Shown: positions 12,461-40,479, counted from the stretch's first letter. The stretch: 44,870 bases of DNA from Octopus bimaculoides (GCF_001194135.2 NC_068983.1:140435778-140480647), one strand, 5' to 3'. The notes: generated from the sequence alone by a model not told the origin. Numbers and translations: made by a program.

Positions 12461-13128
12461 TTATATATCGCCTGAAAAAACGCAATTACATCTTATAATT
12501 CAGGGAAACAGTTGCATAGTCAAGTATCTGCACGACAGAGAACTACGTTGCGTCGAAACAACTGAAGTGATTTAAAAATAAATATCCAGCCTTACGCAAT
12601 TTTGTTGACACCTATTTCTTCAATTATCTATTCATACACGACAGATGCCAAAACTCAAGCGTGGAAGTACGTATATACTGCTACTGGGTAGCACATGGTA
12701 AATCTAATATATATATATATATATANNNNNNNNNNNNNNNNNNNNNNNNNNNNNNNNNNNNNNNNNNNNNNNNNNNNNNNNNNNNNNNNNNNNNNNNNNN
12801 NNNNNNNNNNNNNNNNNNNNNNNNNNNNNNNNNNNNNNNNNNNNNNNNNNNNNNNNNNNNNNNNNNNNNNNNNNNNNNNNNNNNNNNNNNNNNNNNNNNN
12901 NNNNNNNNNNNNNNNNNNNNNNNNNNNNNNNNNNNNNNNNNNNNNNNNNNNNNNNNNNNNNNNNNNNNNNNNNNNNNNNNNNNNNNNNNNNNNNNNNNNN
13001 NNNNNNNNNNNNNNNNNNNNNNNNNNNNNNNNNNNNNNNNNNNNNNNNNNNNNNNNNNNNNNNNNNNNNNNNNNNNNNNNNNNNNNNNNNNNNNNNNNNN
13101 NNNNNNNNNNNNNNNNNNNNNNNNNNNN

Positions 13129-13177
<49 letters not shown>

Positions 13178-15587
13178 TAAACTTCAACTACGGAACTTGA
13201 GGCACATAATATTGTCTATCTTCTATAAGTCCGAAAAAGAAAACAGAAAACAATAATAAGAATTTATACATCCGGATATTAACTGTGTCATAACATAACA
13301 TGTTGTTCATTTAAGCATATTACGGTATGACTCTTGCTCTTCACCATGTTATTGTGAGTCTTTCAAGTAAAAGTAATACCTGATACGCACATACAAATAT
13401 ATATATATATGTGTGAGTGTGTGCGTACGTATATATATGTCTGTGCGTGTATAGGGTGACATGCGTGCATGTGTATGAGTAGGTAAATATATATGTATAT
13501 ATATATGTGTGTGTGTGTGTGTGTTGGTATGTAAGTATACACGTGTTTATAAATATATATATGCATCTGTATTTATATGAATATATGTATATATGNNNNN
13601 NNNNNNNNNNNNNNNNNNNNNNNNNNNNNNNNNNNNNNNNNNNNNNNNNNNNNNNNNNNNNNNNNNNNNNNNNNNNNNNNNNNNNNNNNNNNNNNNNNNN
13701 NNNNNNNNNNNNNNNNNNNNNNNNNNNNNNNNNNNNNNNNNNNNNNNNNNNNNNNNNNNNNNNNNNNNNNNNNNNNNNNNNNNNNNNNNNNNNNNNNNNN
13801 NNNNNNNNNNNNNNNNNNNNNNNNNNNNNNNNNNNNNNNNNNNNNNNNNNNNNNNNNNNNNNNNNNNNNNNNNNNNNNNNNNNNNNNNNNNNNNNNNNNN
13901 NNNNNNNNNNNNNNNNNNNNNNNNNNNNNNNNNNNNNNNNNNNNNNNNNNNNNNNNNNNNNNNNNNNNNNNNNNNNNNNNNNNNNNNNNNNNNNNNNNNN
14001 NNNNNNNNNNNNNNNNNNNNNNNNNNNNNNNNNNNNNNNNNNNNNNNNNNNNNNNNNNNNNNNNNNNNNNNNNNNNNNNNNNNNNNNNNNNNNNNNNNNN
14101 NNNNNNNNNNNNNNNNNNNNNNNNNNNNNNNNNNNNNNNNNNNNNNNNNNNNNNNNNNNNNNNNNNNNNNNNNNNNNNNNNNNNNNNNNNNNNNNNNNNN
14201 NNNNNNNNNNNNNNNNNNNNNNNNNNNNNNAATTTTGACTAATTGCATTTATACACTTTTTATACTCGTTTTCGAAATAAAATGTACATAATAAATTTGT
14301 TTGCAGATTTTCTTAATATAAATTTCAAAAATGAAATTATTTTAATTTTACATTAGTGAAGGTGGAAACAAAAAGAAGAAATTGTATTACACAGTTTGAA
14401 ACATACATGCGCCATTCAAAACATACAGAAAATTATGAAATTATGTCATATATATATATATATATATACTTATATACACACCAGTGTGCAATCGTGTGTG
14501 ATTGTTAACGGTAGTCTTTATATACATATGCTTTTCTGTGTTCGCGTGTGCTAGCGAAATTGTATATATTTTAGTGCACAATTTTAACATGCAATAAATT
14601 CAACATGATATTAATCAAACCTAACAACATCAAAGATTCCAAAAATAAGACTGAAAGCTTCAGTGGCAATGCCAGCAAATGAAATAAATAACGTATCTGA
14701 AAACGAAGCCTCACTAACGTGAAAAAGCAGAAATAAACTTGGCATTTCAAATATCACTGAACATAGTTTGTTTTTCTTCTTATTTACACTGAAGATCAAA
14801 TAAATTTAACTTTAATGGTAATGATTAACAGTATTTCGCCCAGTTTAATATAAACCATAGAACAGATGAAATGGATGCGCAAAAAATTCATATTTGGCTA
14901 CTTTTGGTATCTTATAATTAATCCACTGATCTTCACCTTCATTATTTTCCTCAATTTTCGGTAGATGTATATGTTGATTTAATAGCATTGTTAAATTTAT
15001 TTTATTCTTGTAATATAATTTTCAATATATATCAAATATACATATACGTATCAGCAAATGATCAATAATTGAAAGAAATAATTTCTAAGCAGGTTATTAA
15101 TTGTGAGATTATGGAACATATAAAGGATTTATTGATATTTCTTTTAACTAATATTTAGGAATATCACCTCTGTAGATTGTAGCGGTTAATTTTTTACTTT
15201 TCTATCGTTCATGTATATAACCGTATGTGGTCTAGAAAAATAGCGTCCTCAAACCATCTTCAATTAAAAATAGAGTCGCTATAGCTATTGAATATTATTT
15301 TTATATTCACACTATGAATTTAGTTTACATATATTTGGAGTCGACCCTATCAAGTTGCACACTATTCTCGCTAGATGGAATGTGTGATTAAAAAATGGTT
15401 TACCGGTTTACCACATTTATCTAATGATAGCCACAGACTTTGAAAATTCAGTATTTAGCATGACTTTATCGGCACTCAACGCTGTTGATTGGGCGTCAAG
15501 TGATGCACTTTGTGTTGTAGGTTGCAGCATTCTATATATTACATTATTAATGTTTGATGGATATTAGTCCTCGTTTTCTTTGCTATT

Positions 15588-15633
15588 AACACAACCTTTC
15601 GGCTGATATACTCACCAGCCTTCTTCAGGTGTC
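15588..15633 (-). ncRNA. Minimal type-I hammerhead ribozyme motif (near-intact)
   Basis: Minus strand GACAC-CUGAAGA-A-GGCUG-GUGAGUAUAU-CAGCC-GAAA-GGUU-GUGUU. Stem I GACAC/GUGUU, core CUGANGA and GAAA, stem II GGCUG/CAGCC, cleavage triplet GUU. The stem-III palindrome ACGU is mutated to AGGU. Confidence 0.72.
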
Positions 15634-15710
15634 CTGGGGGAAATTTCGAACCTGAATTCTCATTCCTGGGTTCCATAATATTTTTCGATATTATTATTAT
15701 TATTATCATT

Positions 15711-16265
15711 GTGTGAGAGAGCAGTGCATGCCATCAAAGTGACACTGGTGTAAAATATACGTAGCCCATTACACCCATCATGACTACCCGTCTGATAAGG
15801 GTACACCAGGCACATGCATCATAACAACATGTGCGCGACATGGGGATCTCATATCAAGATGAAAATCGCATGACCTCGCAGGTGGGGTCCAGTTAGAATT
15901 TTCTTCAGGTCGAGTAGCACATCCCGCTCAAAAGGTCCTTGAATAAGGTTTGTTTATGGATGTTGAGCAAAACATCCATGATTCGAAAGGTGAATTTTTC
16001 AAACCCCCAAAGAATGCCTCTCAACACATGCCTATGATTCTCCCCCGTTACTTCTGCTCATGATCAGTGATGCACATACCGTCAGCCACCAAGGGACATG
16101 CTCAACTGGTTAAGGTCAAACAACTGACAAGCAAATCTGTGGTATTAAGCAGAATATTTGCTGTAGCCCATTTTTTATACCAAGATAAAACAATGTACAT
16201 GATAATATTTCCAATCAATTAAGATCAGAAGCCATGAGAGCCACTGCCTTGTACTGCATTCGGGA

Positions 16266-16267
<2 letters not shown>
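15711..16267 (-). mobile_element. ~557-bp non-coding (TAA)n-embedded element, apparently full-length copy
   Basis: Homologous to 19458-20053, 20109-20213 and 20289-20335. TTA/TAA arrays on both sides; no credible ORF. Confidence 0.88.
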
Positions 16268-16355
<88 letters not shown>

Positions 16356-16360
<5 letters not shown>

Positions 16361-16423
16361 TGACTGCCTGGAATCGGACGTGGAATCTTGTGTTCAGCAA
16401 CTCCCGCTCTTAACCACTACACA
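16356..16423 (-). other. tRNA-like Pol III head (left copy, degenerate)
   Basis: Minus GTAGTGGTTAAGAGCG (A-box-like)...TTGCTGA loop...GTCCGATTCC (degenerate B-box); 48/65 identical to the right copy by manual alignment. Confidence 0.75.
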
Positions 16424-16434
16424 ATATGCCCGTG

Positions 16435-16501
16435 GGCGTAGTGGTCAAGAGCGCGGGCTACTAACCCCAAGATTCCGAGTTCCATTCTAGGTATTTACCT
16501 C

Positions 16502-16502
<1 letters not shown>
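16435..16502 (+). other. tRNA-like Pol III head (right copy, degenerate)
   Basis: GGCGTAGTGGTCAAGAGCG, GGG-CTACTAA-CCC anticodon-like stem-loop, GAGTTCCATTCT degenerate B-box. The consensus of the two heads restores GAGTTCGATTCC. Confidence 0.75.
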
Positions 16503-16578
<76 letters not shown>

Positions 16579-16586
16579 TGATGATG

Positions 16587-16682
<96 letters not shown>

Positions 16683-16684
16683 TA

Positions 16685-17550
16685 TTTTCTTTACCCACCT
16701 AAAAAAAGTGGGTAAAGAAAAGAATGCATGGTCAATTTCACAGGAATGTTGAAGATAAGACAGACAGAGAAAAAACGATGGCTCTGGATGATTAGATGTG
16801 ATTTAAAACCGAAAGCGGAGGCTCTAATCTGCGCTGCCTAATAGCAAGCACCAAGAAGAAACTACATAAAATACAGAATAGACAACACAGCAGAAAGTGA
16901 TAAGTGCAGAATCTGTGGACAAAACGGTGAAACGGTATGTCATATTACCAGCCAATGTACGCAAATAAGCCAGAAGGAATATAAGAGACGCCACGACAAT
17001 ATAGCTAGGCTTGTCCATTGGACACCCTGTAACAAGTATGGACTTGATAGAGCAAACAATTGGTAGGACCACAAACCTGAACGCGTCGACGAAAATAGAA
17101 ATGCAAAGATCCTGTGGGATTTTATGATTCAGTACGACCATGAGATAGAGAAAAGGAAGTCAGACATAGTCTTAATTGAGAAAGAAAACAAATTATGCTG
17201 GATCATAGACATAGCATGCCCAGCTGGCAACAAGGTATGCGATAAGCAAGAAAGAAAAGTCGAGAGATATGACAGGTTAGCTTGGTAAGTTAAGCAGTTG
17301 TGATGGATGAAAAAGGTAGCAGTAGTACCAATAATTGACGGAATCCTGAGAACAGTGAGCAAAAATCTCGACATTTACGTGGAACAAATAGGAGCTTCAA
17401 TAAGGGTGGAACACTTGCAAAAAACAACACTACTTGGAACCGCTCGAATATTCTGGAAGGTGCTCGAAAAATAATAGGTGTTACCTTACTTCACTGGTAG
17501 TGAACAGCTGAAACGGTCGGACATTTCCAGCGTTACAAGTTGTGCAAAGC
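16685..17550 (+). mobile_element. 5'-truncated R4/Dong-like LINE (CCHC + RLE) inserted in (TAA)n
   Basis: KRMHGQFHRNVEDK...DLKPKAEALICAA...CRICGQNGETVCHITSQC (C-x2-C-x8-H-x4-C)...EYKRRHDNIARLVHW...KILWDFMIQYDHEIEKRKSDIVLIEK...IIDIACP...LQKTTLLGTARIFWKVLEK* (stop 17472-17474). ~75-nt UTR; (TAA)n on both sides. Confidence 0.93.
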
Positions 17551-17604
<54 letters not shown>

Positions 17605-17677
17605 TATTATTATTATTATTATTATAACATCGAAAAATACCTTCGGAATGAGAACCCAGTTAAGAAATTTCCCCCAG

Positions 17678-17723
17678 GACATCACAAGAAGTCTGGAGAG
17701 TATATCACCCGAAACATTGTGTT
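17678..17723 (+). ncRNA. Degenerate (probably inactive) hammerhead motif in right arm
   Basis: GACAT-CACAAGA-A-GTCTG-GAGAGTATAT-CACCC-GAAA-CATT-GTGTT is homologous to 15588-15633, but the CUGA core and stem II are mutated. Confidence 0.5.
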
Positions 17724-18478
17724 AACAACAAGCAAGATGAGGACAAATATCCGTCACATGTAAATAATGTAAATAATGTACATAATTCCTCATCTCTCAA
17801 ACATAGAACTGTATTCTATATATTAATCATGAAGATACGACGGTGAGATACTGTAAAATGTAGATAAGAATTAAACTGAGCGTTGCCCAATTTTCTGGAA
17901 ACCTATAACACTCTCATTAGTTTCCTTTACAGAAATTAAGGCGAACATATAAACAGGTGTTTCCATGGTAAAGGAAAATATTCACTCAACAAAAGGTACA
18001 CGGAATCTTCATAAAGCACGAAAAAGCTTAAACTTAGAGACTAATATGAGGATGAAACCTATATAAAAGGAGAGAAGCAGAACAATATACTGAGAATCAA
18101 ATAACATATTGTGTGATTAACGTTGAATATTGTATGTAAATATTTTTCATTAAAGGTAATTATTTACAGGCTCTTTCCAGATCAGCCACGTACCATGGAA
18201 AAAACAGAGACGACTTATAACTAGAAAAATCTCCTTGTGTCACAAGAAATCTCTATAGCCAATTTATCAGCTAAAGACTTCAACTCATGTTAATTTATAA
18301 CATTCGAGAACAATAGCCTTTTATTGATTAAATAAACTTGATTAAATTTACAATACATTTTTCTTTCATTATATACTTAATGATATTCCTTTAACGTAAT
18401 CAATAGATTGATTTTCGAAGTTCATTTTATAGTATTAATTCTATACATCATTTCTGGTGGAACTATTCATTAAAATGG

Positions 18479-18645
<167 letters not shown>

Positions 18646-18665
18646 TTTTTGTTATTTTTACTATT

Positions 18666-19417
18666 ATATGTTTAACTTTTGCTTTGTATTTGTACAAGTT
18701 GGCTCCAAGTCTCATCCAGAGACCTGTTAGACGTTCATGTTGGTATTATGCCTAGGTTGTGATATATTTGGATTTCTATATAGTATTTTTCTAGAGAATG
18801 TTTAAGAAAGGATATAATTATGAGTTAGTTTTAAAACTTGAGATTACATTGGCAGTACATTATGTAGGATATGGTCTGTTCCTATGAGCACTATCTGTTG
18901 AATTTATACCATCGTGTGGTATCCTGGTATCTGGGCTAGGTAGCAATCAACCTCTTTTTTAATCATTCATATGACAACAGATATTGTCTTAGTCTTGAGG
19001 TTCCATATTTTACCAGTCTCTACTTCAAGATCTTTATACTTGCTTAGATTTTGGTAGGGATCTGACAGATACATTTATATCAATTGGGACAGTCATATTA
19101 ATGAGTACGTATGATGTTTGTCTTAAGACTTTCAATATAATGTCTGGCCTATTCGCATCTATCTTTTTGTAAGTTTGAATGGTGAAGCTCCAGAGGAGTG
19201 AGATGTGATCCTTTACACTGGAGGTGGATTGTGTTCCACCCAGTTTTTTATCGTGGGGCAGCTAAACGTTTTGGCAAATTACCCAGAGTATATAATGTGC
19301 TGCTCTCTCATGCCGGTTGAGATATTTTGTAGGCGCAAGGAGACTGCCCATGAGAACAACATGTTCAACGATTTCATTTTGTGGTTTATATACACATATT
19401 GGGCAGCTGTCTTTCAC
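18666..19417 (-). mobile_element. 5'-truncated R4/Dong-like LINE in (TAA)n
   Basis: Homologous to 4062-5148. Decayed APTKYLNRH..AAHYILWVICQ...IGTDHILHNVLPM* (stop 18844-18846). Shared 3' terminus; arrays on both sides. Confidence 0.9.
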
Positions 19418-19457
<40 letters not shown>

Positions 19458-20053
19458 GAGTGAGAGTGCAGTGCATGCCATCAAAGTGACACTGGGGTAA
19501 AATATACGAAGCCCATTATACCCATCATGACTACCTGTCTGATAAGGGTACACTAGGCACATGCATCACAACCATATGTACGTGACATGGTGATCTCATA
19601 TCAAGATAAACAGTGCATGACCTCGCAGGTGGGGCCCAGTTAGAATTTTCTTCAGGTTGAGTAGCGCATCCCGCTTAAAAGGTCCCTGAATAAGGCTTGT
19701 TTAAGGATGTTGAGCAAAACACCCATGTTTTTAAAGGTGAATTATTCAAACCCCGAAGAACTCCTCTCAACACATGGCTATGATGCTCCCCCACTACTTC
19801 TGCTCATGATCAGAGATGCACGTATCGTCAGCCACTAAGGGACATGCTCAACTGGTTATGGTCAAACAACTGACAAGTAAATCTGTGGTATTGAGCAAAA
19901 TATTTGCTGTAGCCCAACTTTTATACCTAGACAAAACAATGTACGTGATANNNNNNNNNNNNNNNNNNNNNNNNNNNNNNNNNNNNNNNNNNNNNNNNNN
20001 NNNNNNNNNNNNNNNNNNNNNNNNNNNNNNNNNNNNNNNNNNNNCCGGGCATT
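19458..20053 (-). mobile_element. ~557-bp (TAA)n-embedded element, second long copy (gap 19951-20044)
   Basis: Colinear with 15711-16267; resumes after the gap with CCGGGCATTT then (TTA)n. Confidence 0.88.
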
Positions 20054-20064
20054 TATTATTATTA

Positions 20065-20108
<44 letters not shown>

Positions 20109-20213
20109 GAGTGAGAGAGCAGTGCATGCCATCAAAGTGACACTGAGGTAAAATATACGAAGCCCAATATACCCATCATGACTACCCGTCTGATAAGGTT
20201 ACACCAGGCACAT
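20109..20213 (-). mobile_element. 5'-truncated copy (~105 bp) of the 557-bp element
   Basis: Retains only the GAGTGAGAGAGCAGTGC...CCAGGCACAT end; arrays on both sides. Confidence 0.88.
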
Positions 20214-20243
20214 ATTATTATAATAATAATAATAATAATAATA

Positions 20244-20288
<45 letters not shown>

Positions 20289-20335
20289 GAGTGACAGAGT
20301 AGTGCATGCCATCAAAGTGACACTGGAGTAAAATA
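20289..20335 (-). mobile_element. 5'-truncated copy (~47 bp) of the 557-bp element
   Basis: GAGTGACAGAGTAGTGCATGCCATCAAAGTGACACTGGAGTAAAATA; fused directly to unrelated sequence at 20336. Confidence 0.82.
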
Positions 20336-21700
20336 TGATGATGGTAGTAATGGGAATGATGTCGCTGTAGACAGTACTGGTGTATCGGCTGTTGTACAAA
20401 GCATTTGTGTACTTGTTCCCGAAGGTGTCTCTCCACTCTAATCATACCTACCAGGTTATTTTTTGTGACTTCGGTGGTGTTTTCACTTCTTTATTTTTGC
20501 GAGAACTCTCGGGGTTTTGCCATTGAGGTTCTTCGCCGTCACCACAGAGTTTTGCTGCTGTTATGTTGATAATAAAGTTCTTGTTTTATAGGGTTCTGAT
20601 GCTGTTGTTTTTGCTGCTACCTGGAATGTAGATGTTGGTGAGTTTTCTGTTCTGTTTGCTGCTGTTGCCTCCACTGTTGTTGATCTTCTTATTGCTGCTT
20701 CTATTGTTGCTGCTGCTGCTGTTACTGTCACTATTGCTTTTGCAACCGCAGTAGTCACCTTCTGTGCTGTTCTGTTGCTGTTCCCAGTGTGTCGGTGGTG
20801 GTGTCAGCGAAATTTTCCTGTTTGTGGGCAGAGGGTTTTGATATGATTTGTTTCCACACGTAGGTGACATGTCGGCCCTCTGCTCTCAACATCCACGTGA
20901 AGTTTGTGATATCTAGTACGATTATGAAGCTTGAGATGTCCTCGACGCTTGTTGATCCGCCTGTATTGATATTTGCATACTTTGTCTTAACCAGTTCTGC
21001 TTCTCTATTCTTTGTATCAGCAGAATAGTGATTTTCCCTTCTATATCGAAGAGAAACTCAGCCACCAACAAGCAGTTATTTATATCTGGTGGTATATTTA
21101 GTATTTTACTTTCAATACCCTTTGCCCTAGGTAAATGGGTATGAGGATGATTTGGACACTTGATAGGCTGACTGTTGGGTGATTTCTGGCCTCCTCTTAT
21201 GAAGTGAACTTCACTTCGGCAGTCCCATACTTCCCTTCTGGATATATAAATATTGCTTTTCCAAATTAGTCGTAAACATTTCGCGGCGGCGGAAGTGGTG
21301 GTCGTGGTGGGCTTAATGTTACCACAGGGGGTGTATTCCAAACGTGCACTTGAAACTGAATCGTGGAAATATTAAGAAAAGCACAGTTCAGAAGCATTAG
21401 CTTCTTCAAAACAGAAAGACTAAATTTTCTAAATAGTTATCAAATAACATCTAGAAAGATTAACTCTTAAAGGCAAATCTTCTGCCAAACAAGGAACATC
21501 CCTACCTACATCCTCTTGCAAATATCAAAACACAAACACATTTCTATACTAACAACTTCCTGACCTAAATTTGACACATCTAATCTCTTACATGCGTGAG
21601 TAATAACCTATTCTTCCCTACCAAATAATTTTCTGAACACCGAAAATTCGTATATAAATCTACTAAGCTTTTTATCTAATTGCATTATTTTGTGAACCCT
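20336..21700 (-). mobile_element. Decayed gag-like ORF1 of a non-LTR retrotransposon (L1/Tx1-like), with zinc knuckle and T/A/Q/S-rich tail
   Basis: Track ORF 20922-21341 (..ILNIPPDINNCLLVAEFL..) continues, frameshifted, into HVDVESRGPTCHL/CGNKSYxKTLCP, a decayed C-x2-C-x4-H-x4-C knuckle at ~20822-20880. Low-complexity ORFs 20561-20870 follow. Clade and boundaries uncertain. Confidence 0.55.
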
Positions 21701-22703
21701 CAAAAACTCTATCACCTAAAGGTTAACATACCAAAATGAACTCATCTAATTACAACGGTATAATTGCTAAATTTTAACACATCCCAAACTAAAATTTCAA
21801 ATCCGCCATCAATAAGGAAATTAAATCAATGACAACTAAACACAGTGACACATCTGCTTAACAACAAACGATTTCACCTACCTTATCTTTTTGTGAAAGA
21901 TAAAAATGCCCAAGATCTGAAGGTGACGCACCTAAATAGAAACAGTGGATTAAAATTGTCTGCATGCATGAAGAATTCAGAATAACACAAATTTAAATTA
22001 CTGTAATTCAGTAATTCTGTAATACCTTTCCATGATAACCTACTCGTTCCGCCGCCGCCGCCTCCTGTCATATCTCTGCTGCTGCTGTCGACCGCGCAGT
22101 TCTCACCCAGCCTCCGCCCATCCGCATACAGCGCCCTAGACCGATGGTGCTGCACGCTTTACGGCTCCACGAACCTCAATTATCATTGAAGAAGGTTCTA
22201 CCAGGCCCCAAAAGATCTTAACTCAACATATACTACATAATGTTTTGAAATGTACAACATTAATGATAGCTAAGCGCTCAGAATCTCTGAAGTCACACTT
22301 GTTCTTGTTAAAGAATAATAAAAATTTTCTCCACAAAAAGCATTGAATAATTTTTAACGTAAACGTTTTAAATCATAACTTGATACAAAAAGTAACATTA
22401 ATACATAGGCACACCCTCCCACGCAAATCACCAAGTACATACGCAAACACACACATAAGAAATAGAAATAAAGTGCGTAAAAGTCAATACGAAGAGTACT
22501 CCAATGTGAGTTCAATATTGGTAAACGTTTCAATTTCCTGTATTATCACAATAAATAGTTTCCTGTTCATACGTACGTTCATCACTACGTTCCTCTATTT
22601 AAAGTAAAGTTTTGTGAGTACAGTGCGATTGACGTCTGACGAACGAATGCATGTACGGGAAACTATTAAAAACGCGATAAGTACATGTAGTTGAAACGTT
22701 TAG

Positions 22704-26570: not shown

Positions 26571-29500
26571 AGAGCAAATAAGTAACAAGGCTGTCCAGGT
26601 ATCAGTGCATTCCGGCGAGAAAGACAACAGAGCGACAGTAAATCGTGTTGAAAGTGGGAGACGAGATAAAATACAACCAGTCGCTTCAGTGGTTGGCGTG
26701 AAAAGGAAAAGAGAATAAGAGATAACGGTAACCACGCGTCATATGTAATCAGTAGAAGTAAGAAAATGGTAGAGAGCAGAGCGAGACACACAAATCTGAG
26801 AGGGAAGGGGAGAGGGAAAGCAAAAAAAAACAGAAACAAATAGTAGCACAGAGTGTAGATAGAGGAGGGGAGAAAGAAAGAGAGGGAGGTTAAAATGGTA
26901 CCTCTTCCTTCTCTGCTCCCTGTGCTCTGTGCTTCTCCGTGCCCTCTACCACTCTTCTCCCTCCAATTACTGACACGTCTCCAGTTGCCATCCTCATCGC
27001 TTACAGTTTTAATGGATGTTTTCAGGAATTTTGTAATAAATTAGTCCATTTCCAATCCTACTAAACGAAGATTAAGATTATTTTCTTTCGAGGAAGTCGT
27101 TCTGTCTTCTCTTGAGATGTTCCTTGGGGACTCGGTCATTCTTTTCTCTGCTTCAATTGACGTAAAATCACAATTTCTTATCATCATTCAGGATGCACTA
27201 AAGTAATCAGGAGTAACCAGGTGCTGAGCGAAAAAGATGGTGGTAATAGAGGAGAGTTGGAGGAGTGCATGAATTTATCGATTTCTTTCAGACCTTGTGC
27301 CAGTCATTAATTGAGGTTTTGAACTCTACCGATGAGGTGGAGGTGACGAGGATCGTACCTTCATTCTATTTATTGGACAAATTCCCTCGAAACTGACAAG
27401 TTGTAGTAATGCGTAGAGACTTGAGGTCGAATTTTCCCTCCTGCACGCGTGAAAGCCGTTTTAATGCAGTTCCTTCAGTCACAGCGCTTCTTTTGTGTAA
27501 ATCATAAATGCTTCGATCCGCATTGGCAGATTTGGAACCTTCATTTGAAGGCTCATTTTTTTCTACTTAGCACTCCATTCTCATATATCTGAAAAGAGGT
27601 AAATTTTGTTCAAAATTCTGAAAACTATAAGCATTGGAAACGCAGAACTACAAAACCTGTAGAATACTATGATAATATTACTTTTTGAAATATCATTAGG
27701 AGGAAACGAATGGATTTACCTGACAACCCAACATACAGAAAAGCTACTCCCAGTAATATTTCCACAAAGGTTCATGAGGATGAGTTTGTTAGTTAGCTTT
27801 TTGTTGCGATAGCACATTTATTTCTTATTAGATAGATGGATAATCATTGAAACAAATTACTAACTTCAGGAGAACAGAGAGCTTTAATTATATTATTATT
27901 GCATATTTTAATATATGCTGTAATATTGAAAACGTAAGATTACATTCAACTTTAAAACCAAGAGGTGATACTGTACCAGATATTTAAGTACCATTATGTA
28001 TGATTTGTAGATATCATATATCGACTGTTACATTTGGTAAATGGATGTAAAATGCTGAATGTAATTTACAATCATCGTTTGCATTTCAATTTCAGAGGAA
28101 AAAATCATCAATTAATTAAAAACGTTTTAAATATTTATAACAAAATTCACTTTGCAGGATATTAACAATCAAATGGATTAGGCCATAAATCAGTGAAGAT
28201 TTATTATACATTTAAGAAAATATAATCAAGGCAAATATTTTTGTGAATATATCTACTTAAAGACACGTAAAATTACTGAGCACTTTCACATGGCCAGCAA
28301 GTATGTTAAGAATGTCTAAAGAAAAACGAAAACAACATTTATTCCAGGTAATGAGTAACTCTTATATTTCCCTTCCTTACAGATATGTTATTCTAAAGCA
28401 ATAAATTGACTGATCCAGCCAATTTTTATTGTACAGAATTGCATTTACGAGTAATTCATAATATTTCTGCATTATTAAGATACAAGAAACTATTGATTTT
28501 CATTAAATATGGAATGAGTTGAGATATTGCAAATAAGATGATGCATGTTGCAGTGAGCATCGACCGAATGAGGCGCAACCTTACAGGAATATTAGAGTTT
28601 CAGCTTTAAGGGAAGCGTGCGAAAATATACCCCGATATATGCTAAACCTACGCTTACTTTTCTGCTATACTCGTTAATTAAGTAATCATCAGCATTTTAC
28701 GATGTTTTCTTGTTTAACAAATTTTTTAAATTCTGTATTTAAACTTAGTATATAAAAACATTTGTTGCAATAACAATTTGAAGAGGCAGGTGGCATTTTT
28801 GGATTTGATAATGATAAGAAGTACAAGTATCAATTGTATTTTGTTCATGATATTCGTGGTGTGTGATGTTCGATATAGACAAGACCATTATGAAGGTAAA
28901 TTCGAGAAAGGCGGATTCAATGTAGATTGTGTAGCTATGAAAGTGTTTAATGATTATGTCGATCTGCAACAAATTGAACTATGTGCATCAGCTACTATTG
29001 CATAAGACCTTTGTTTGAAGAAAATTCCTGCTACAGCAATGTGATTAACAAAGGGTAAATCGATTGTTTGTTCATTTCGAAGGACTCCAGCCAAAGGGAA
29101 ATACTTTGGAAATGTGTTAAAGCGGAGCACATTGAAGAGTTGCAACTAACCAATGATACGAAGTGAAAAAGGAATGTTAATCTAATATTTTTTTGTTGCC
29201 TAAAAACATTATTGAAAAAGATATGATCGAGTGAACAGCCTCGACAATGAATTTCATGCTATTCATGTGTTTGTATCAGCAATGGAACCAATTCAAATTG
29301 ATATTGAACAACTGTTTCCATAAGATACAAACACGATCACTGCAAAAGCATGTTTGTTTTATTCTAGAAAATTTCAGTTGACAGAATACTCCAACATGTC
29401 TCCGGTTAGGTAAATGTGTCAAGAAAATAGTCGATCTGCCCAGTAGTGGAAATGTGATTAGATTCATATGGTAATTGAATAACATTATGTTACAAAATTT

Positions 29501-32125: not shown

Positions 32126-34084
32126 TAAAATCTAAGGTTATTTTTGTAATCAAAAGAAAAACACTGTGAAACATTGAACAAAATTTAGAAAAACAATATT
32201 GTTGTTACACAGTGTAATTCAAATATAGTCTCGAATGTACTTGACTCATTTCTAAATTTACCACCAAAGTACAATATGTAGCAAAGAATCTTTAGGAGAG
32301 AATGTTTATCACTTTATTAGATAATTCCTAACTTTTCGTTCCGAATCGGAACTCGTATCAATTGTAGAACACACATATTACAGAGAAATGTGCAATCATA
32401 AAAAAAAAAACACCGAAAATAATCAAGCGAAGCACGAGATAATCGGAGATAAAATGTAAGAACATTGTTAAAAGATGAAAATATTTCTATTCACTGGACA
32501 CAAAACTCTTAAGTTGCTGAAATTTTTTCTTACTATCAGTAATATTTATCCAACATACATTGAAACAGAGAGACCATTTCTGCGTTAGGGAATTTCGTTA
32601 CAATTTTGGGATCAAGTTCGAGCGGCAACAGCATTAAGGCTAAACATTTCTTGAAGTAATATCTTTCGACATTTTTTTTTTGTTTTTGTACTTTGCAAAA
32701 TCTACCTCTTCTCGAAACTGCAAGTCTTTTATTAGGCGTCTTTTTTCTTTTGATCGAAATTTGTTTTGTTCATGTTTATACATTTCTCATCTCCACATCT
32801 CCAAATTATGCGAAATATGTTGTTTTTTTTCGGACATTTATTTAGAGCATCCAAAATATTTAAAACAAAATCAGAAAACAAACGAACATACGTTCTTAAG
32901 TATGTTAAGCGAATATACATTTTTCAAATTCATACTCTTAGGATATAATAAATCTCATCATTATTGGAAAAATAACAAATTTAAATTTTATTGATTGTTT
33001 ATTTTAATTTTAATGTTTATTATGTATCCTGTGTTTTGTCTGAAAATGGCATGATTTTTGTGAAAAGTGTATGAAAAAGTACTCATTTTCTAAATGAATA
33101 CTGAATAGCAACTTTGTAAAATAAAATTAGCACGTGTTCAAATAAATTGGTTCTTCGCTTAATTATATTTACCATTCATTGAGAGAATAAAGTACGTAAA
33201 TACGCCAACACATAATCTCTTCACTACCCGTATTCACGCCGATACTGGAGCAATAAATTAACACACAGTCGCACATATTCGATGAAGATGAGAGAAAATT
33301 TCAGTTTTCTTTTTAAATTATCCATGAAGTAAATGAAAACAAAGTGTTGTATAATTTAATTGACCTTATATTTAGAATGTACTTAACACGTTTGAGAAAA
33401 TTATTGCTCTGTACCAATGGTTGTTATGAATTATTTTTATGCTACTGATTTTACGTCTCTTTTTGTTTTCTTTCTCAGTAATCATCACGTAAGTATATGT
33501 TTTCATGATCAGTTTATTCCAACTCATCAGTTAACCTAATCAACATACACATTGCATGAGGAGTAAGTTTAGTTTCTAATTCATTTTATCTTATTTATTT
33601 GGTTTTGTTTCTCTCCATAAGTTTAAGAGATCCTCAATGCAAGTCAAGTTCTACGCAGAAAGTAAATAATCAATTGAATATGTTGTTACTTGAGAATCAA
33701 TTGTGTTAGATTGAAACTAAACGTATCACCATTTGTCAACGTGTACATTCTTCTAATATATGCAAGAATAGCTCTTAGTTATTCATTCATAAATCAGTTA
33801 GATGCACTGAAGTTCATACATGTTCCTTATAATTTTGGTTATAATGAACTTGTATATATAAAGAACGTTACTAATATTATGGCTTCAAATGTCAAATAAA
33901 CAAATTACTAAATTTGTAATGTCACATGGATCTGCAATATATCTCACTACGTTTTTAGTGAAGTATGAATTTCACTGTTAGAAATAAAATATTAGAAACC
34001 TTGTACATTAAGGAAAATGCCGGAAACGTTATAAAATAAACAAAATCAGGCTAAACAGGTTATCTGCCTCAACAGCTCCTTTAT

Positions 34085-35340
34085 AGGATTCAGTGGCTAA
34101 AGACATCATCAAGAAGAACCACGTCCGGTTTCGGCCCCTACTCCGCTATCGTTTCCGACGTGGCACTCCCCACCACACCTTTCAGAGGTATCGTCAGCTC
34201 TGGTGTTGAGTGCGTTTTTTCTTTCTCCTTTTTTATTTTGTTCTGAGGTTTCTTTGATGCAGCGCCAACGAATATCAGCGGGCGAATAACCATCCTACCA
34301 AATAACCCTTTAAATACTTGCCGGTAGGCTGCAGCAGCCAGCACCAACTAACTGTCACGTGACACTATCTAAGATTCAACTGACTCATGGAGGAGAAGTG
34401 CACGTACTTCTAACCCACGCCCTCTCTAAACCTGCCTTCCAATAGTGTCCTGTTAGTTTCAGTTTCACCAGCCAGATCCGACCAGCTGTTTGGTGGGACA
34501 AGCCTTCGAACCACGAAGAGGGTGCGTTATGAACAAGATCGCTACCGTGTCCCACCTGTCAATCAGCGATTCTGATTCAGTGTCAGCCAGCCTCACCTAG
34601 GTACGCTATTTCCCAGTCGGTATGCTATGGTATTCAAGCCATTTTGGGTCTTCTCGCTGCAGCCATGTATAGAAGCTGGCTTTTTCGACTGCCTCCTGTA
34701 TCTTCCTTATTAATTTGTCCAGCTCTGAGCTCGAAAATGCAAACCTTCTTTGAAATAGCGTTGCCATTTTCCTTTCAATGAAGCCTCTAGCCGCCACTGC
34801 CAGGTGATAATACTCGACAGTCCATTCCTGTTTTTCGCACTCTTCGATTAATCTCTCATACCTCTTCTTCCGTTGCTCTGCATTAGCGATGTTCTCTTTC
34901 TATGGAATTGTCAGCTCTAACAAAAAAATCCATTTTTCCATTCAGTGTTCCACAGGATTAAGTCCGTTTTATTTTTTTTGGTTTCTATGAGTGGAAATAT
35001 TGACAGTCTTTCCAAATTCGCGGCCAGCTCCCAGTATCCCTTCCATCATTCCTCTGTCTCGTATACTTTATTTGAAGGCCTGGCCATCTTTTCCCTCCTT
35101 CTGCTAATATATTTTTCCGCTTTTTACCAATTTTGGGTACTCTTTCCTATCACATACCTCGAGCTTCTTGAGTGCAGCATTTACGACAACGAGGACTTGA
35201 TCTTGACACCGAAAATTAAGTGTTTGAATTTTATCGGATGGGACCTTATGTACCTCTTGATACGATTCTAGAATAGCAAAGTCTACCTGGTACAAAACAT
35301 AAGCAAAAGTTGACAACGAATTCTCCGGAGAAATAGCCGA
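34085..35340 (-). mobile_element. HERO-like RLE non-LTR retrotransposon 3' fragment with ~520-nt 3' UTR
   Basis: QDQVLVVVNAAL...WIFLLELTIP*KENIANAEQRKKRYERLIEECEKQEWTVEYYHLAVAARGF...IQEAVEKASFYTWLQREDPKW (track ORFs 35104-35316 and 34606-34797). ELTxPWE / xARGF / AEKASxxxW are HERO-type RLE motifs as I recall them. Confidence 0.8.
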
Positions 35341-38300: not shown

Positions 38301-39567
38301 CTGATGTTTATATTTTGATAAATACGAAAGAAATTTTTTTTCCAAATATTCTTCACGTCAGTTATTTATTAATCAGCACCAACCGTGTTAAGAAAAAAGA
38401 AACTATGATATATATTTTTCAATTTGAAACAAATGTCACACACTAGAAACTGACTTCTAGAAACATCAGGTTGAAGTAGATAAAGAATTTATATGATCCA
38501 GAAAAATCGAGATTCTAAAGTTGTGTTTCTTTTGGAGATTCAAGACAAAATATAACTATTGAACTCAAGACTTCACCAGAATTTCTTCGTTATTTTTTAT
38601 TTCATGTTAGACACACATTAGTGAGATATATACTATACATGCTATCTAAATGTCGGAAAAATTGTTTGATGAAGACAGAGTCGAGCATCAATCTTTATAT
38701 TTATCGTTGCGCAGATTTGCAGGTTAACTGCCACATGCACAAATATCTTATAATAGAGTATTCTTTTACCTTTACTTCGCACTCTGCTATCATATCCGTT
38801 CCGTCTTTTTCCACTATGTGTGGTATTCGAATTAAAATGTTCTTCAGCTCTTTGTTTCAGTAGAGGTAAAGATATTGAGCTCATGCATTATATCCTGCAT
38901 CTATCATTTACTAATTATCTCCAACATTCGTTCAACATACGTTCAAACCAATATTTTATGGGGGTGTAAAAATAAATAAATCGAATCCTGACATATATAG
39001 TAGAAAGTGGAAATCAAGTGGTCTATAACGTAGTATACTACGAAGGGACGTTGGCAAACGAAATGTCCTGAAATAATGCAATAAGCATGTAATTACAAAA
39101 TTACTTGTTGTAATTAGGTAACTCCTATATATTTAGGTCACATCCCTGATCAGTTAAAAGAAACTAAAATGGTAGTAGTGAATAAAATCGAGTAGATAAT
39201 CTCCTTGAGTGTATGTCTAAGACAAACAAAATGCAAGTGTTTTGCAAACTGGTATATGTATTTATGTTGGATATTTAGAAAAACTTTGGCCGAAAACATT
39301 TTCATAAAATGCGAAGATCGAACTTCCGGTAAATATTTAGCCAACCGAGAGGCATAGAACTCCCAGTTTCATAGTTCAATGAATTTCATCAAATATCTGT
39401 TGTGTTCAGATATTTCTTTTCCTGTTCTCGTTTTAATTGTTATCCGTTTCATTTGCTTCAATACAACTATATTGATACAGCATATATCTAGATCGATGAT
39501 TCGGATAATGTTAAATACATTATCTCTGATAAACTGTGCATCTCATATATGAGTCACATTCTACAAT

Positions 39568-39655: not shown

Positions 39656-40479
39656 CTTACCTAGATATATATATTTATAGTTATATATATAGGTTTATAT
39701 ATATATTTATATTTATATATATATATATNNNNNNNNNNNNNNNNNNNNNNNNNNNNNNNNNNNNNNNNNNNNNNNNNNNNNNNNNNNNNNNNNNNNNNNN
39801 NNNNNNNNNNNNNNNNNNNNNNNNNNNNNNNNNNNNNNNNNNNNNNNNNNNNNNNNNNNNNNNNNNNNNNNNNNNNNNNNNNNNNNNNNNNNNNNNNNNN
39901 NNNNNNNNNNNNNNNNNNNNNNNNNNNNNNNNNNNNNNNNNNNNNNNNNNNNNNNNNNNNNNNNNNNNNNNNNNNNNNNNNNNNNNNNNNNNNNNNNNNN
40001 NNNNNNNNNNNNNNNNNNNNNNNNNNNNNNNNNNNNNNNNNNNNNNNNNNNNNNNNNNNNNNNNNNNNNNNNNNNNNNNNNNNNNNNNNNNNNNNNNNNN
40101 NNNNNNNNNNNNNNNNNNNNNNNNNNNNNNNNNNNNNNNNNNNNNNNNNNNNNNNNNNNNNNNNNNNNNNNNNNNNNNNNNNNNNNNNNNNNNNNNNNNN
40201 NNNNNNNNNNNNNNNNNNNNNNNNNNNNNNNNNNNNNNNNNNNNNNNNNNNNNATATATATATATTTATTTATATATATATATTTTATATTTATATATAT
40301 ATAAATACATAGTGTACATTTAAACACATAAGAGAGATGTCCATAATAGGACATCTAACCCGCTAGAAGGAGCAGTCAAACTCCAAACCACAATTAGCGA
40401 TAATTTCGAAAGGGAAAAACGGGAACAGGAAAAGAAGTATCTGAACTCAACAGATATTTCAAGTAATTCAGTGAACTAT

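What the first reader, a model, noticed from the sequence alone, without database searches (positions are those of the whole stretch)
15530..17825. Palindromic tRNA-headed, hammerhead-bearing retroelement inserted as one unit (12-bp TSD)
Seen: perfect direct repeat TTCTATATATTA at both ends. Removing the two nested insertions leaves tail'-(TTA)n-head'-ATATGCCCGTG-head-(TAA)n-tail, two divergent units back to back, with the left arm ~35 bp shorter than the right. Each unit joins a tRNA-like Pol III promoter, a microsatellite and a hammerhead motif. Established: SINEs use tRNA heads; PLEs and retrozymes use hammerheads; PLE insertions are often inverted and asymmetric. Inference: a non-autonomous SINE/ribozyme hybrid that moves as an inverted dimer. 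It could yield divergent Pol III transcripts, self-cleaved ends or long dsRNA. I do not recall a description of this architecture, but cannot search the literature.
Basis: partly seen in the sequence, partly recalled or inferred. Interest (0 to 1): 0.9.

Follow-up and report, generated by a model that had tools for sequence, protein, structure and literature searches.

The report
Penelope-type inverted retroelement insertion
This 2.3-kb block is an old, ORF-less retroelement insertion made of two back-to-back inverted copies under one target duplication, and its shape plus a minimal hammerhead motif match the known insertion signature of Penelope-like elements rather than a new kind of mobile "palindromic SINE".

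Summary
A perfect 13-bp direct repeat (ATTCTATATATTA) flanks two inverted arms that are about 80% identical. Each arm is head, (TAA)n, then tail, and two later insertions are nested in the microsatellites. The right arm runs 40 bp further than the left.

The left arm carries a complete minimal hammerhead at 15588-15633 on the minus strand. It has every core nucleotide, a 5-bp helix I, an 8-bp helix II, one unpaired A before stem II and no helix III. My descriptor hits it once in 44.9 kb and hits none of 300 shuffles. Rfam's canonical hammerhead models do not see it. The right-arm copy has decayed.

The "tRNA-like head" failed every test I could run: ARAGORN, the Rfam tRNA model, A/B-box statistics, alignment to tRNAs and folding.

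Four features together match published Penelope-like element (PLE) insertions: head-to-head inverted copies, a 30-40 bp "tail" at one end only, a variable-length TSD in AT-rich DNA, and a minimal hammerhead.

Most likely the PLE machinery built the dimer at integration, rather than the dimer being what moves. No other copy could be retrieved, so family structure and the autonomous partner remain untested.

Verdict: a new member of a known kind, of modest interest.

The parts
15529..15541 (.). Left copy of the target-site duplication, ATTCTATATATTA
   Evidence: D5, 13 nt, 100%.
15542..15684 (-). Left arm, 3' part ('tail', pLTR-like). Its sense strand is the minus strand and its 3' end abuts the TSD.
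   Evidence: (I2). It is 80% identical to the right tail.
15588..15633 (-). Intact minimal hammerhead motif: GACAC-CUGAAGA-A-GGCUGGUG(AGUA)UAUCAGCC-GAAA-GG-UU|GUGUU. The predicted cleavage site lies between 15593 and 15592.
   Evidence: the only descriptor hit in the window, with 0 of 300 shuffles; 1 of 60 decoy cores; the 8-bp helix II is in the MFE structure, z = -3.2.
15685..16265 (-). Nested interspersed repeat ('Rep-L', about 560 bp) with its (TAA)n 3' tail, inserted in the arm's microsatellite.
   Evidence: 90% identical copy at 19455-19950, plus two fragments.
16266..16356 (.). Left-arm microsatellite, (ATT)n on the plus strand and (AAT)n in the arm's sense.
16357..16422 (-). Left arm, 5' part ('head').
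16423..16435 (.). Unique 13-nt spacer at the head-to-head junction, AATATGCCCGTGG.
16436..16503 (+). Right arm, 5' part ('head').
16504..16680 (.). Right-arm microsatellite, (TAA)n with a few interruptions.
16681..17603 (+). Nested 5'-truncated non-LTR retrotransposon 3' end, consisting of an ORF remnant with 4 stops, a 3' UTR and its own (AAT)18 tail. A 13-bp-stem hairpin sits at its 5' border (16688-16720).
   Evidence: single frame; weak zf-RVT; 48 homologues, best 64-69% aa.
17604..17630 (.). (ATT)7 plus ATAAC: a strand-switched microsatellite stub next to the right tail.
17631..17772 (+). Right arm, 3' part ('tail'), homologous to the left tail. It contains the decayed hammerhead homologue at 17678-17723.
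   Evidence: (I2); no stable fold, z = -1.0.
17773..17812 (+). 40-bp extension present only on the right arm, corresponding to the PLE 'tail'.
   Evidence: Published comparison.
17813..17825 (.). Right copy of the target-site duplication.
   Evidence: D5.

Best explanation
This is an old insertion made by the machinery of a Penelope-like element (PLE). It consists of two copies of the same short, ORF-less, pLTR-like RNA, each reading head, (TAA)n, then tail with a minimal hammerhead. They are joined head to head in inverted orientation inside one staggered cut of an AT-rich target.

Mechanism (inferred from the published PLE mechanism, not shown here):
1. The PLE RT/GIY-YIG protein nicks both strands 13 bp apart.
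2. Both 3'-OH ends prime reverse transcription at internal start sites of the template RNA. One nick used the distal site (the right arm, which runs 40 nt further) and the other used the proximal site (the left arm).
3. The two cDNAs run to the same 5' end and are joined with 13 extra nucleotides.
4. Repair leaves the 13-bp duplication.

The inverted dimer is therefore a product of integration and not the unit that moves.

Later, the internal (TAA)n tracts attracted a (TAA)n-tailed repeat and a (TAA)n-tailed LINE fragment. The arms drifted to 80% identity, and the right-arm ribozyme core decayed.

The hammerhead is of the dimer-dependent, low-activity PLE type. Its role in the life cycle is unknown, even for bona fide PLEs.
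For: Shown in the sequence:
- A single perfect 13-bp TSD around everything.
- Arms inverted head to head, with both 3' ends facing the TSDs.
- A 40-bp extension on one arm only.
- An AT-rich target.
- A complete minimal hammerhead in the left arm with exactly the traits reported for PLE min-HHRs: an unpaired nucleotide 5' of stem II, an 8-bp helix II, a 5-bp helix I and no helix III. It is the only hit in 44.9 kb, with 0 of 300 shuffles and 1 of 60 decoy cores.
- The arm 3' ends lie 51 and 94 nt past the predicted cleavage site. This is the same scale as the 85-92 nt in the Anolis PLE.

From the literature:
- PLE inserts often carry an adjacent inverted pLTR, and head-to-head is the most frequent arrangement.
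- A 31-bp tail sits at the 3' end of one inverted pLTR, with the other 37 bp shorter. TSDs are 8-10 bp (PMC3846280).
- A 30-40 bp tail at one end and variable TSD length are reported (PMC8557442).
- PLE protein cleaves and extends both strands, starts RT at two internal sites that define the tail, and targets AT-rich DNA (PMC11167929).
- Dual min-HHRs occur 100-700 bp apart on opposite strands (PMC4209133). Here the spacing is 2045 bp, or about 541 bp once the nested elements are removed.
Against: - No RT or GIY-YIG coding sequence lies in the element or anywhere in the window. No homology to an autonomous PLE could be shown.
- No second copy of head or tail was found in the window or in any searchable collection. 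The family, its copy structure and its bimodal 3' ends are therefore unverified.
- Rfam hammerhead models give no hit at E<=10, even on 171 nt.
- The right-arm motif is broken, and the L/R differences in helix II are not compensatory.
- The helix III dinucleotides (AGGU on the left, ACAU on the right) are not palindromic as a dimeric min-HHR would need. The ancestral ACGU is only an inference.
- The 13-bp TSD is longer than the 8-10 bp examples I could cite.
- Both arms stop at the same 5' position. That fits a short full-length template but is not typical of randomly 5'-truncated PLE copies.
- My descriptor was written after seeing the motif.
Confidence: 0.6

Rival explanations
1. A non-autonomous tRNA-headed SINE carrying a hammerhead exists in the genome as a palindromic dimer and transposes as that dimer.
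For: One TSD encloses both units. Both arms end at the same 5' position. The head has A-box-like and B-box-like strings 33 nt apart in both arms. The sense strand of each unit has no T4 terminator. The hammerhead motif is real in one arm.
Against: The tRNA head fails ARAGORN, the Rfam tRNA model, box statistics, alignment and folding. Each head could only transcribe its own arm, so a dimer-length RNA would need an outside promoter and would fold into a long hairpin. The arms are only 80% identical, while the TSD is perfect (P = 0.059 if both have the same age). Published PLE biology already produces such dimers de novo. No second dimer was found.
Confidence: 0.08
2. A LINE-dependent SINE was inserted twice in one event, by a twin-priming-like reaction in which both nicks primed on two SINE RNAs. 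The hammerhead-like motif would be incidental.
For: A 13-bp TSD in AT-rich DNA is typical of endonuclease-plus-TPRT insertions. Twin priming joins two cDNAs at a junction with microhomology (PMC2912911). A possible 4-nt overlap, GCCC/GGGC, exists at the junction (my reading). (TAA)n-tailed LINE and SINE-like repeats are active in this genome.
Against: Classical twin priming inverts a different part of the same RNA and does not duplicate the same part. 5' inversion is rare for trans-mobilised SINEs: only one Alu example was found in that human-chimpanzee survey. Neither arm ends in a simple-repeat or A-rich tail. The tail shows no similarity to the LINE fragment in the window. This model does not explain the 40-bp one-sided extension or the significant min-HHR.
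Confidence: 0.12
3. A DNA-type element (a MITE or foldback transposon) with long terminal inverted repeats and internal microsatellites.
For: Inverted arms flanked by a direct repeat are the classical TIR-plus-TSD picture. The element has no coding capacity. The extreme termini show loose similarity, CATTATTAATGTTTGATGGAT against CAGTTCTATGTTTGAGAGAT (my reading).
Against: From general knowledge, no TIR superfamily makes 12-13 bp TSDs; Mutator reaches 9-11 bp. The arms do not end symmetrically, since one has a 40-bp overhang. The hammerhead motif and its distance to the ends fit a retroelement. No other copy lies in 45 kb.
Confidence: 0.07
4. Coincidence. Two independent insertions landed in opposite orientation next to each other, and the flanking 13-mer is a chance match in AT-rich DNA.
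For: Chance 12-13-mers do occur in this AT-rich window, at about 40 unrelated pairs spaced 500-5000 bp apart.
Against: The probability of such a pair sitting at both arm ends is about 2e-4 to 2e-3. No internal TSD copies lie at the head-to-head junction. The two 5' ends abut within 13 nt.
Confidence: 0.03

Closest known systems
Penelope-like element insertions with inverted pseudo-LTRs and a one-sided 'tail' (Arkhipova et al. 2013, PMC3846280; Craig et al. 2021, PMC8557442; Frangieh et al. 2024, PMC11167929)
   Same: Head-to-head inverted copies under one TSD. A 30-40 bp extension at the 3' end of only one arm (40 bp here; 31 and 37 bp in Adineta). An AT-rich target. TSD length not fixed. A hammerhead in the repeated part, upstream of the insertion's 3' end.
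   Different: There is no RT/GIY-YIG ORF and nothing lies between the arms. Each arm holds a long internal (TAA)n. Both arms stop at the same 5' position. Homology to an autonomous PLE was not shown. The TSD is 13 bp, against 8-10 bp in the cited cases.
Minimal type I hammerheads of metazoan PLEs (Cervera and de la Pena 2014, PMC4209133; review PMC7761336)
   Same: All core nucleotides are present. There is no helix III. One nucleotide is unpaired at the 5' end of stem II. Helix II is long (8 bp here, 7-8 reported) and helix I is short (5 bp here, 4-5 reported). Dispersed copies, and pairs on opposite strands 100-700 bp apart, are reported.
   Different: The nucleotides between A14 and U16.1 are not palindromic in either arm. 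The partner copy is mutated. Activity is untested. Rfam models do not score it.
Schistosome Sm-alpha / Sj-alpha SINE-like elements (Ferbeyre 1998, as cited in PMC2770079)
   Same: A short non-autonomous retroposon that combines a 5' small-RNA-like head with a hammerhead.
   Different: Sm-alpha heads are recognisable as tRNA-Gln pseudogenes by tRNAscan, and their ribozyme is a canonical hammerhead found by Rfam-based searches. Here neither the tRNA nor the canonical hammerhead is detectable.
Animal non-LTR retrozymes (PMC7761336; bioRxiv 10.64898/2026.07.22.740005)
   Same: Short ORF-less hammerhead-bearing repeats proposed to derive from PLE pLTRs.
   Different: Retrozymes are head-to-tail tandem arrays that yield circular RNAs through efficient type I hammerheads. 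This element is a single inverted pair with a minimal motif.
L1 twin priming (Ostertag and Kazazian 2001, as described in PMC2912911)
   Same: Both target nicks prime cDNA synthesis. The two cDNAs join in the middle. One TSD results.
   Different: Twin priming inverts a different, more 5' segment of one RNA. Here both arms are the same segment, and one carries the PLE-type extension.

Membership tests
Penelope-like element (PLE) insertion | ORF encoding RT plus GIY-YIG endonuclease | tested here: not met
   No long ORF lies in the arms. A Pfam scan of 126 stop-to-stop ORFs of the window gave no RVT or GIY-YIG. Heavily 5'-truncated, solo-pLTR and trans-mobilised PLE inserts also lack the ORF, so this only excludes an autonomous copy.
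Penelope-like element (PLE) insertion | Adjacent inverted copy forming head-to-head inverted repeats around the insert | tested here: met
   Both arm 3' ends face outwards, with a 13-nt junction spacer.
Penelope-like element (PLE) insertion | 30-40 bp 'tail' extension at one end only | tested here: met
   40 bp at 17773-17812, on the right arm only. Definition.
Penelope-like element (PLE) insertion | Target-site duplication of variable length, in an AT-rich target | tested here: met
   A 13-bp perfect repeat, ATTCTATATATTA. Variability across copies could not be tested.
Penelope-like element (PLE) insertion | Hammerhead (min-HHR) in the repeated region | tested here: met
   The left arm at 15588-15633 is intact. 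The right-arm homologue is decayed.
Penelope-like element (PLE) insertion | Sequence homology of the arms to the pLTR of an autonomous PLE in the same genome | not testable with these tools
   The source genome is not in any searchable collection.
tRNA-derived SINE | 5' head derived from a tRNA, with an internal Pol III promoter | tested here: not met
   ARAGORN finds none, and still none at an 80% threshold. The Rfam tRNA model gives no hit at E<=10 on the 171-nt centre. A/B boxes at <=2 mismatches each: 1 site against 1.34 in shuffles. Alignment to two textbook tRNAs gives z<=1.4. Folding z is +0.65 and +0.80. A strongly diverged derivative cannot be excluded.
tRNA-derived SINE | 3' end shared with a partner LINE and/or ending in a simple repeat or A-rich tail | tested here: not met
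   The arms end in ...AATAATG and ...GAACTGT, directly at the TSD. There is no similarity to the LINE fragment or to anything else in the window.
tRNA-derived SINE | Many dispersed monomeric copies, each with its own TSD | not testable with these tools
   No other copy lies in 44.9 kb, and no access to the genome was possible.
Canonical hammerhead ribozyme (Rfam Hammerhead_1, _3, _II, HH9, HH10) | Match to a family covariance model (three helices around the core) | tested here: not met
   No hit at gathering score or at E<=10 on 2.4 kb or on 171 nt. Helix III is absent.
Canonical hammerhead ribozyme (Rfam Hammerhead_1, _3, _II, HH9, HH10) | Conserved core C3 U4 G5 A6 N7 G8 A9 / G12 A13 A14 / A15.1 / U16.1 H17 | tested here: met
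   All are present in the left arm. The right arm has A4 and C5.
Canonical hammerhead ribozyme (Rfam Hammerhead_1, _3, _II, HH9, HH10) | Self-cleavage | not testable with these tools
   This needs an in vitro transcription and cleavage assay, with monomeric and dimeric constructs.
Non-LTR retrozyme | Head-to-tail tandem repeats, each with a type I hammerhead | tested here: not met
   Apart from microsatellites, the only direct repeats in the region are two short chance-level two-copy pairs (D3, D4) and the TSD; the two units are inverted.
TIR DNA transposon / MITE | Terminal inverted repeats reaching both ends, and a TSD of the length fixed for the superfamily | tested here: inconclusive
   The arms are inverted but the ends are offset by 40 bp. 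From general knowledge, a 13-bp TSD fits no TIR superfamily. Constancy across copies is untestable.

The most novel reading that the evidence does not exclude
Each arm is a full-length copy of a short non-autonomous element with its own promoter-bearing head. That head might be a very diverged tRNA-type Pol III promoter. The element would parasitise a Penelope-like element through a pLTR-derived 3' end with a minimal hammerhead. That would make it a 'PLE-dependent SINE' outside flatworms, routinely deposited as inverted pairs able to give convergent or divergent transcripts and hairpin dsRNA.
Probability: 0.15. Interest if true: 0.55.

Novelty: new member of a known kind. Interest (0 to 1): 0.3.

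Why it matters
If the reading is right, the locus is a clean fossil of the unusual PLE integration reaction. It shows both strands primed, two alternative reverse-transcription start sites 40 nt apart, and a head-to-head junction, all captured with a very short template.

Short ORF-less PLE derivatives are poorly catalogued in invertebrate genomes and are easily mis-annotated as SINEs, MITEs or unknown repeats. Recognising the signature (one TSD, inverted arms, a one-sided 30-40 bp tail, a min-HHR) helps repeat annotation and assembly curation.

It does not open a new class of element. It would gain interest only if genome-wide copies showed that the unit has its own Pol III head and depends on a PLE in trans.

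Tried and rejected
1. Finding other copies.
- blastn and nhmmer of head and tail against the window and two fetched loci found nothing.
- Protein-word searches of spurious ORFs across tail, head and nested repeat found nothing. The source species is apparently not in the ORF database.
- Two exact-pattern scans each of the metagenome and prokaryote-genome collections gave 0 hits.
- A k-mer search of the paper library gave 0 hits.

2. Naming the organism. Homologues of the nested LINE fragment exist only as unnamed ENA contigs at 64-69% aa identity. My guess of a mollusc or cephalopod remains unverified and is not used.

3. A paralogous empty site. The immediate flanks are unique in the window.

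4. The tRNA head.

5. Canonical hammerhead models were negative. I at first dismissed the motif because of the extra A after CUGAAGA and the missing helix III. I reversed that after reading that exactly these traits define PLE min-HHRs.

6. I tested whether head plus (TAA)n is a separate short SINE and the tails are the TIRs of a MITE. I rejected this as the main model. The two heads abut with no microsatellite between them, heads and tails show the same divergence, and the tail carries the ribozyme and the PLE-type extension.

7. I checked whether the nested LINE family always ends in (TAA)n. Homologues in L001 and L002 do not, so this stays open.

8. No PLE coding remnant was found in the window.

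Full report
**Setting.** The window is AT-rich eukaryotic draft sequence, with GC mostly 0.25-0.40, eight runs of N, and many (TAA)n, (TA)n and (CA)n tracts. No tRNA or Rfam family reaches threshold anywhere in it. No protein domain of note is found in 126 stop-to-stop ORFs. The organism could not be named.

**The observation.** It holds.
- ATTCTATATATTA occurs at 15529-15541 and again at 17813-17825. It is 13 bp and perfect, one base longer than reported (D5).
- Unrelated exact 12-mers spaced 500-5000 bp apart do occur in this window, about 40 pairs. That is about 2e-7 per position pair, so a pair sitting at both ends of an inverted structure has a chance probability of about 2e-4 to 2e-3.
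- Between the repeats lie two inverted arms.
- The outer parts ('tails'), 15539-15666 and 17645-17772, are 80% complementary over 128 nt (I2). There are 25 mismatches, 12 transitions and 13 transversions.
- The inner parts ('heads'), 16357-16422 and 16436-16503, are 74% identical by BLAST, and 84% by MAFFT column identity over a longer stretch.
- The heads are separated by a unique 13-nt spacer, AATATGCCCGTGG.
- Each arm has a (TAA)n tract between head and tail.
- The right arm continues for 40 bp (17773-17812) beyond the point where the left arm meets the repeat.

**Nested insertions.** Both claimed insertions are real and both sit in the microsatellites.
- 15708-16265 is an interspersed repeat of about 560 bp on the minus strand. 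It recurs at 19455-19950 (90% identical), 20106-20213 and 20286-20336, each time followed by (TAA)n.
- 16681-17550 holds the 3' end of a non-LTR retrotransposon ORF in a single frame with four stops. It has a CCHC motif, a weak zf-RVT hit and its own (AAT)18 tail.
- Forty-eight homologues of that ORF exist in unnamed ENA contigs, the best at 64-69% aa identity. Two fetched loci from other species contain the LINE but neither head nor tail.

**The hammerhead.** Rfam finds no hammerhead at gathering score, at E<=10 over 2.4 kb, or at E<=10 over the 171-nt left tail alone. A core search nevertheless finds CUGAAGA...GAAA in the sense strand of the left arm. Read in full, 15633 to 15588 on the minus strand is GACAC-CUGAAGA-A-GGCUGGUG(AGUA)UAUCAGCC-GAAA-GG-UU|GUGUU.
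- Every conserved core position is present.
- Helix I has 5 pairs (GACAC/GUGUU).
- Helix II has 8 pairs closed by a tetraloop.
- One A is unpaired at the 5' end of stem II.
- There is no helix III hairpin.

[quoted passage not shown] The missing helix III explains the silence of the Rfam models.

A descriptor encoding this architecture hits once on both strands of the 44.9-kb window, at this site. It hits 0 of 300 shuffles, or 1 of 300 when relaxed. It does not hit two other eukaryotic loci, and only 1 of 60 decoy cores hits the real window. The 8-bp helix II is in the minimum-energy fold (z = -3.2). I wrote the descriptor after seeing the motif, which weakens the statistics somewhat.

The homologous stretch of the right arm, 17678-17723, reads GACAU-CACAAGA-A-GUCUGGAG(AGUA)UAUCACCC-GAAA-CA-UU-GUGUU. 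Two core bases are changed and three helix II pairs are broken, with no compensation. So one motif is intact and one is decayed. The dinucleotide between A15.1 and U16.1 is GG on the left and CA on the right. An ancestral CG, giving the palindromic ACGU needed for a dimeric helix III, is possible but only inferred.

**The 'tRNA-like head'.** I could not confirm it.
- ARAGORN finds nothing at default or at an 80% threshold.
- The Rfam tRNA model gives no hit at E<=10, even when only the 171-nt centre is searched.
- A-box and B-box consensus matches at suitable spacing are no more frequent than in shuffles: 1 observed against 1.34 expected at <=2 mismatches each.
- Neither head folds better than its shuffles.

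The best-conserved stretch between the two heads, GTAGTGGTYAAGAGCG, does resemble the D-arm region of tRNA-derived SINE heads as I remember them. That is a lead and not a test.

**What the anatomy matches.** Four published properties of Penelope-like elements fit point by point.
1. PLE inserts often carry an inverted copy directly at their 5' end, and head-to-head is the most frequent arrangement. In Adineta vaga such inserts are flanked by 8-10 bp TSDs (PMC3846280; PMC8557442).
2. [quoted passage not shown] In Adineta the tail is 31 bp and the inverted pLTR is 37 bp shorter. Here the difference is 40 bp.
3. Purified PLE protein from Anolis cleaves and extends both DNA strands, unlike R2 and L1. 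It starts reverse transcription at two internal sites of the RNA whose spacing corresponds to the tail, and it targets AT-rich DNA (PMC11167929).
   - In that element the start sites lie 85-92 nt beyond the hammerhead cut site.
   - Here the arms end 51 and 94 nt beyond the predicted cut site.
4. Min-HHRs occur dispersed, and as pairs on opposite strands 100-700 bp apart, which is read as truncated PLEs. Here the two motifs are 2045 bp apart, and about 541 bp apart once the two nested elements are subtracted.

**Mechanism proposed.** This is inferred from those papers and is not shown by the sequence.
- A PLE ribonucleoprotein cut an AT-rich site with a 13-bp stagger.
- Each nick primed cDNA synthesis on a short pLTR-like RNA. 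One used the distal start site and the other the proximal one.
- Both cDNAs reached the same 5' end and were joined with 13 extra bases.
- Repair produced the duplication.

The dimer is thus a by-product of integration. That both arms stop at the same 5' position suggests a short full-length template, meaning a non-autonomous element or a solo-pLTR transcript, and not random 5' truncation.

It is open whether the two arms came from one RNA species or from two diverged ones. If they were identical at insertion, the chance that the 13-bp TSD stayed perfect while the arms reached 19.5% divergence is 0.059.

**Rivals.**
- A LINE-driven twin-priming event would invert a different part of one RNA (PMC2912911). 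It would normally leave a simple-repeat 3' tail, and it explains neither the one-sided 40-bp extension nor the ribozyme.
- A TIR transposon or MITE fits the inverted arms. It does not fit a 13-bp TSD (general knowledge), the offset ends or the hammerhead.
- Pure coincidence is made unlikely by the repeat statistics and by the absence of internal TSDs.

**What could not be done.**
- No second copy of head or tail was found in the window, the fetched loci, the ORF database, the metagenome and genome collections or the paper library.
- The family's normal structure, its autonomous partner and ribozyme activity therefore remain untested.
- No empty site was available.

**Comparison and novelty.**
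- The inverted asymmetric dimer under one TSD is the textbook PLE insertion.
- ORF-less hammerhead-bearing derivatives of PLE pLTRs are being described as animal retrozymes (bioRxiv 10.64898/2026.07.22.740005).

I therefore file this as a new member of a known kind: a short ORF-less, PLE-type inverted insertion. My confidence is 0.6 and the interest is modest. The most novel reading still open is a promoter-headed, PLE-dependent SINE outside flatworms, at a probability of about 0.15.

Noticed in passing
window 15708-16265 (-), 19455-19950, 20106-20213, 20286-20336: An interspersed repeat of about 560 bp ('Rep-L'), always followed by (TAA)n in its sense. At 19.4-20.3 kb one full copy and two 3'-terminal fragments (108 and 51 bp) lie in series, each with its own (TAA)n. 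This is either repeated insertion into the previous copy's tail or a partial-tandem habit. The family was not identified.
   Followed up: partly
window 16681-17603 (+): The 3' end of a non-LTR retrotransposon: CCHC motif, an 'SDIV...IIDIA' nuclease-like stretch, 4 in-frame stops and an (AAT)18 tail. Homologues at 64-69% aa identity occur in unnamed ENA contigs up to 4.4 Mb long. Homologous copies in L001 and L002 do not end in (TAA)n.
   Followed up: partly
window 16688-16720: A near-perfect hairpin (TTCTTTACCCAC-CTAAAAAAAGT-GGGTAAAGAA; stem about 12-13 bp) lies exactly between the right-arm (TAA)n and the start of LINE homology. It draws weak miRNA and cis-regulatory Rfam hits. Its origin is unknown.
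   Followed up: no
window 3464-3502, 7138-7165, 22636-22662, 28659-28692, 33501-33530, 34152-34197, 38808-38847: CTGANGA-N(10-40)-GAAA occurs 9 times in the window against 2.66 expected. Four of the matches, at three loci, begin CTGAAGAAC or CTGAAGAAA. None passes the full min-HHR descriptor and none resembles the tail. They may be decayed hammerheads from other elements, or a composition effect.
   Followed up: partly
window 17551-17625 and 20214-20260: Microsatellite strand switches, (AAT)n directly followed by (ATT)n. These local AT-rich palindromes are unexplained by simple insertion of (TAA)n-tailed elements into a (TAA)n tract.
   Followed up: no
window 15539-15709 (-) and 17542-17763 (+): Both tails keep an open frame of about 45 codons in the sense strand...RNEN..KFPPGH.KK.GEYI.R..VL...K.RTNI...M*. 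In PLEs the ORF start can lie in the pLTR next to the hammerhead. No database relative was found.
   Followed up: partly
window 18533-19300 vs 7557-7808 and 3911-4813: The sequence to the right of the element belongs to another repeat family, with copies at 68-76% identity elsewhere in the window.
   Followed up: no
window 3274-3346, 3968-3977, 7545-7554, 8565-8750, 12726-13128, 13596-14230, 19951-20044, 39729-40253: Eight assembly gaps (runs of N), mostly flanked by microsatellites. The inverted structure itself contains no gap, but long (TAA)n tracts and inverted repeats are prone to misassembly in short-read drafts.
   Followed up: no
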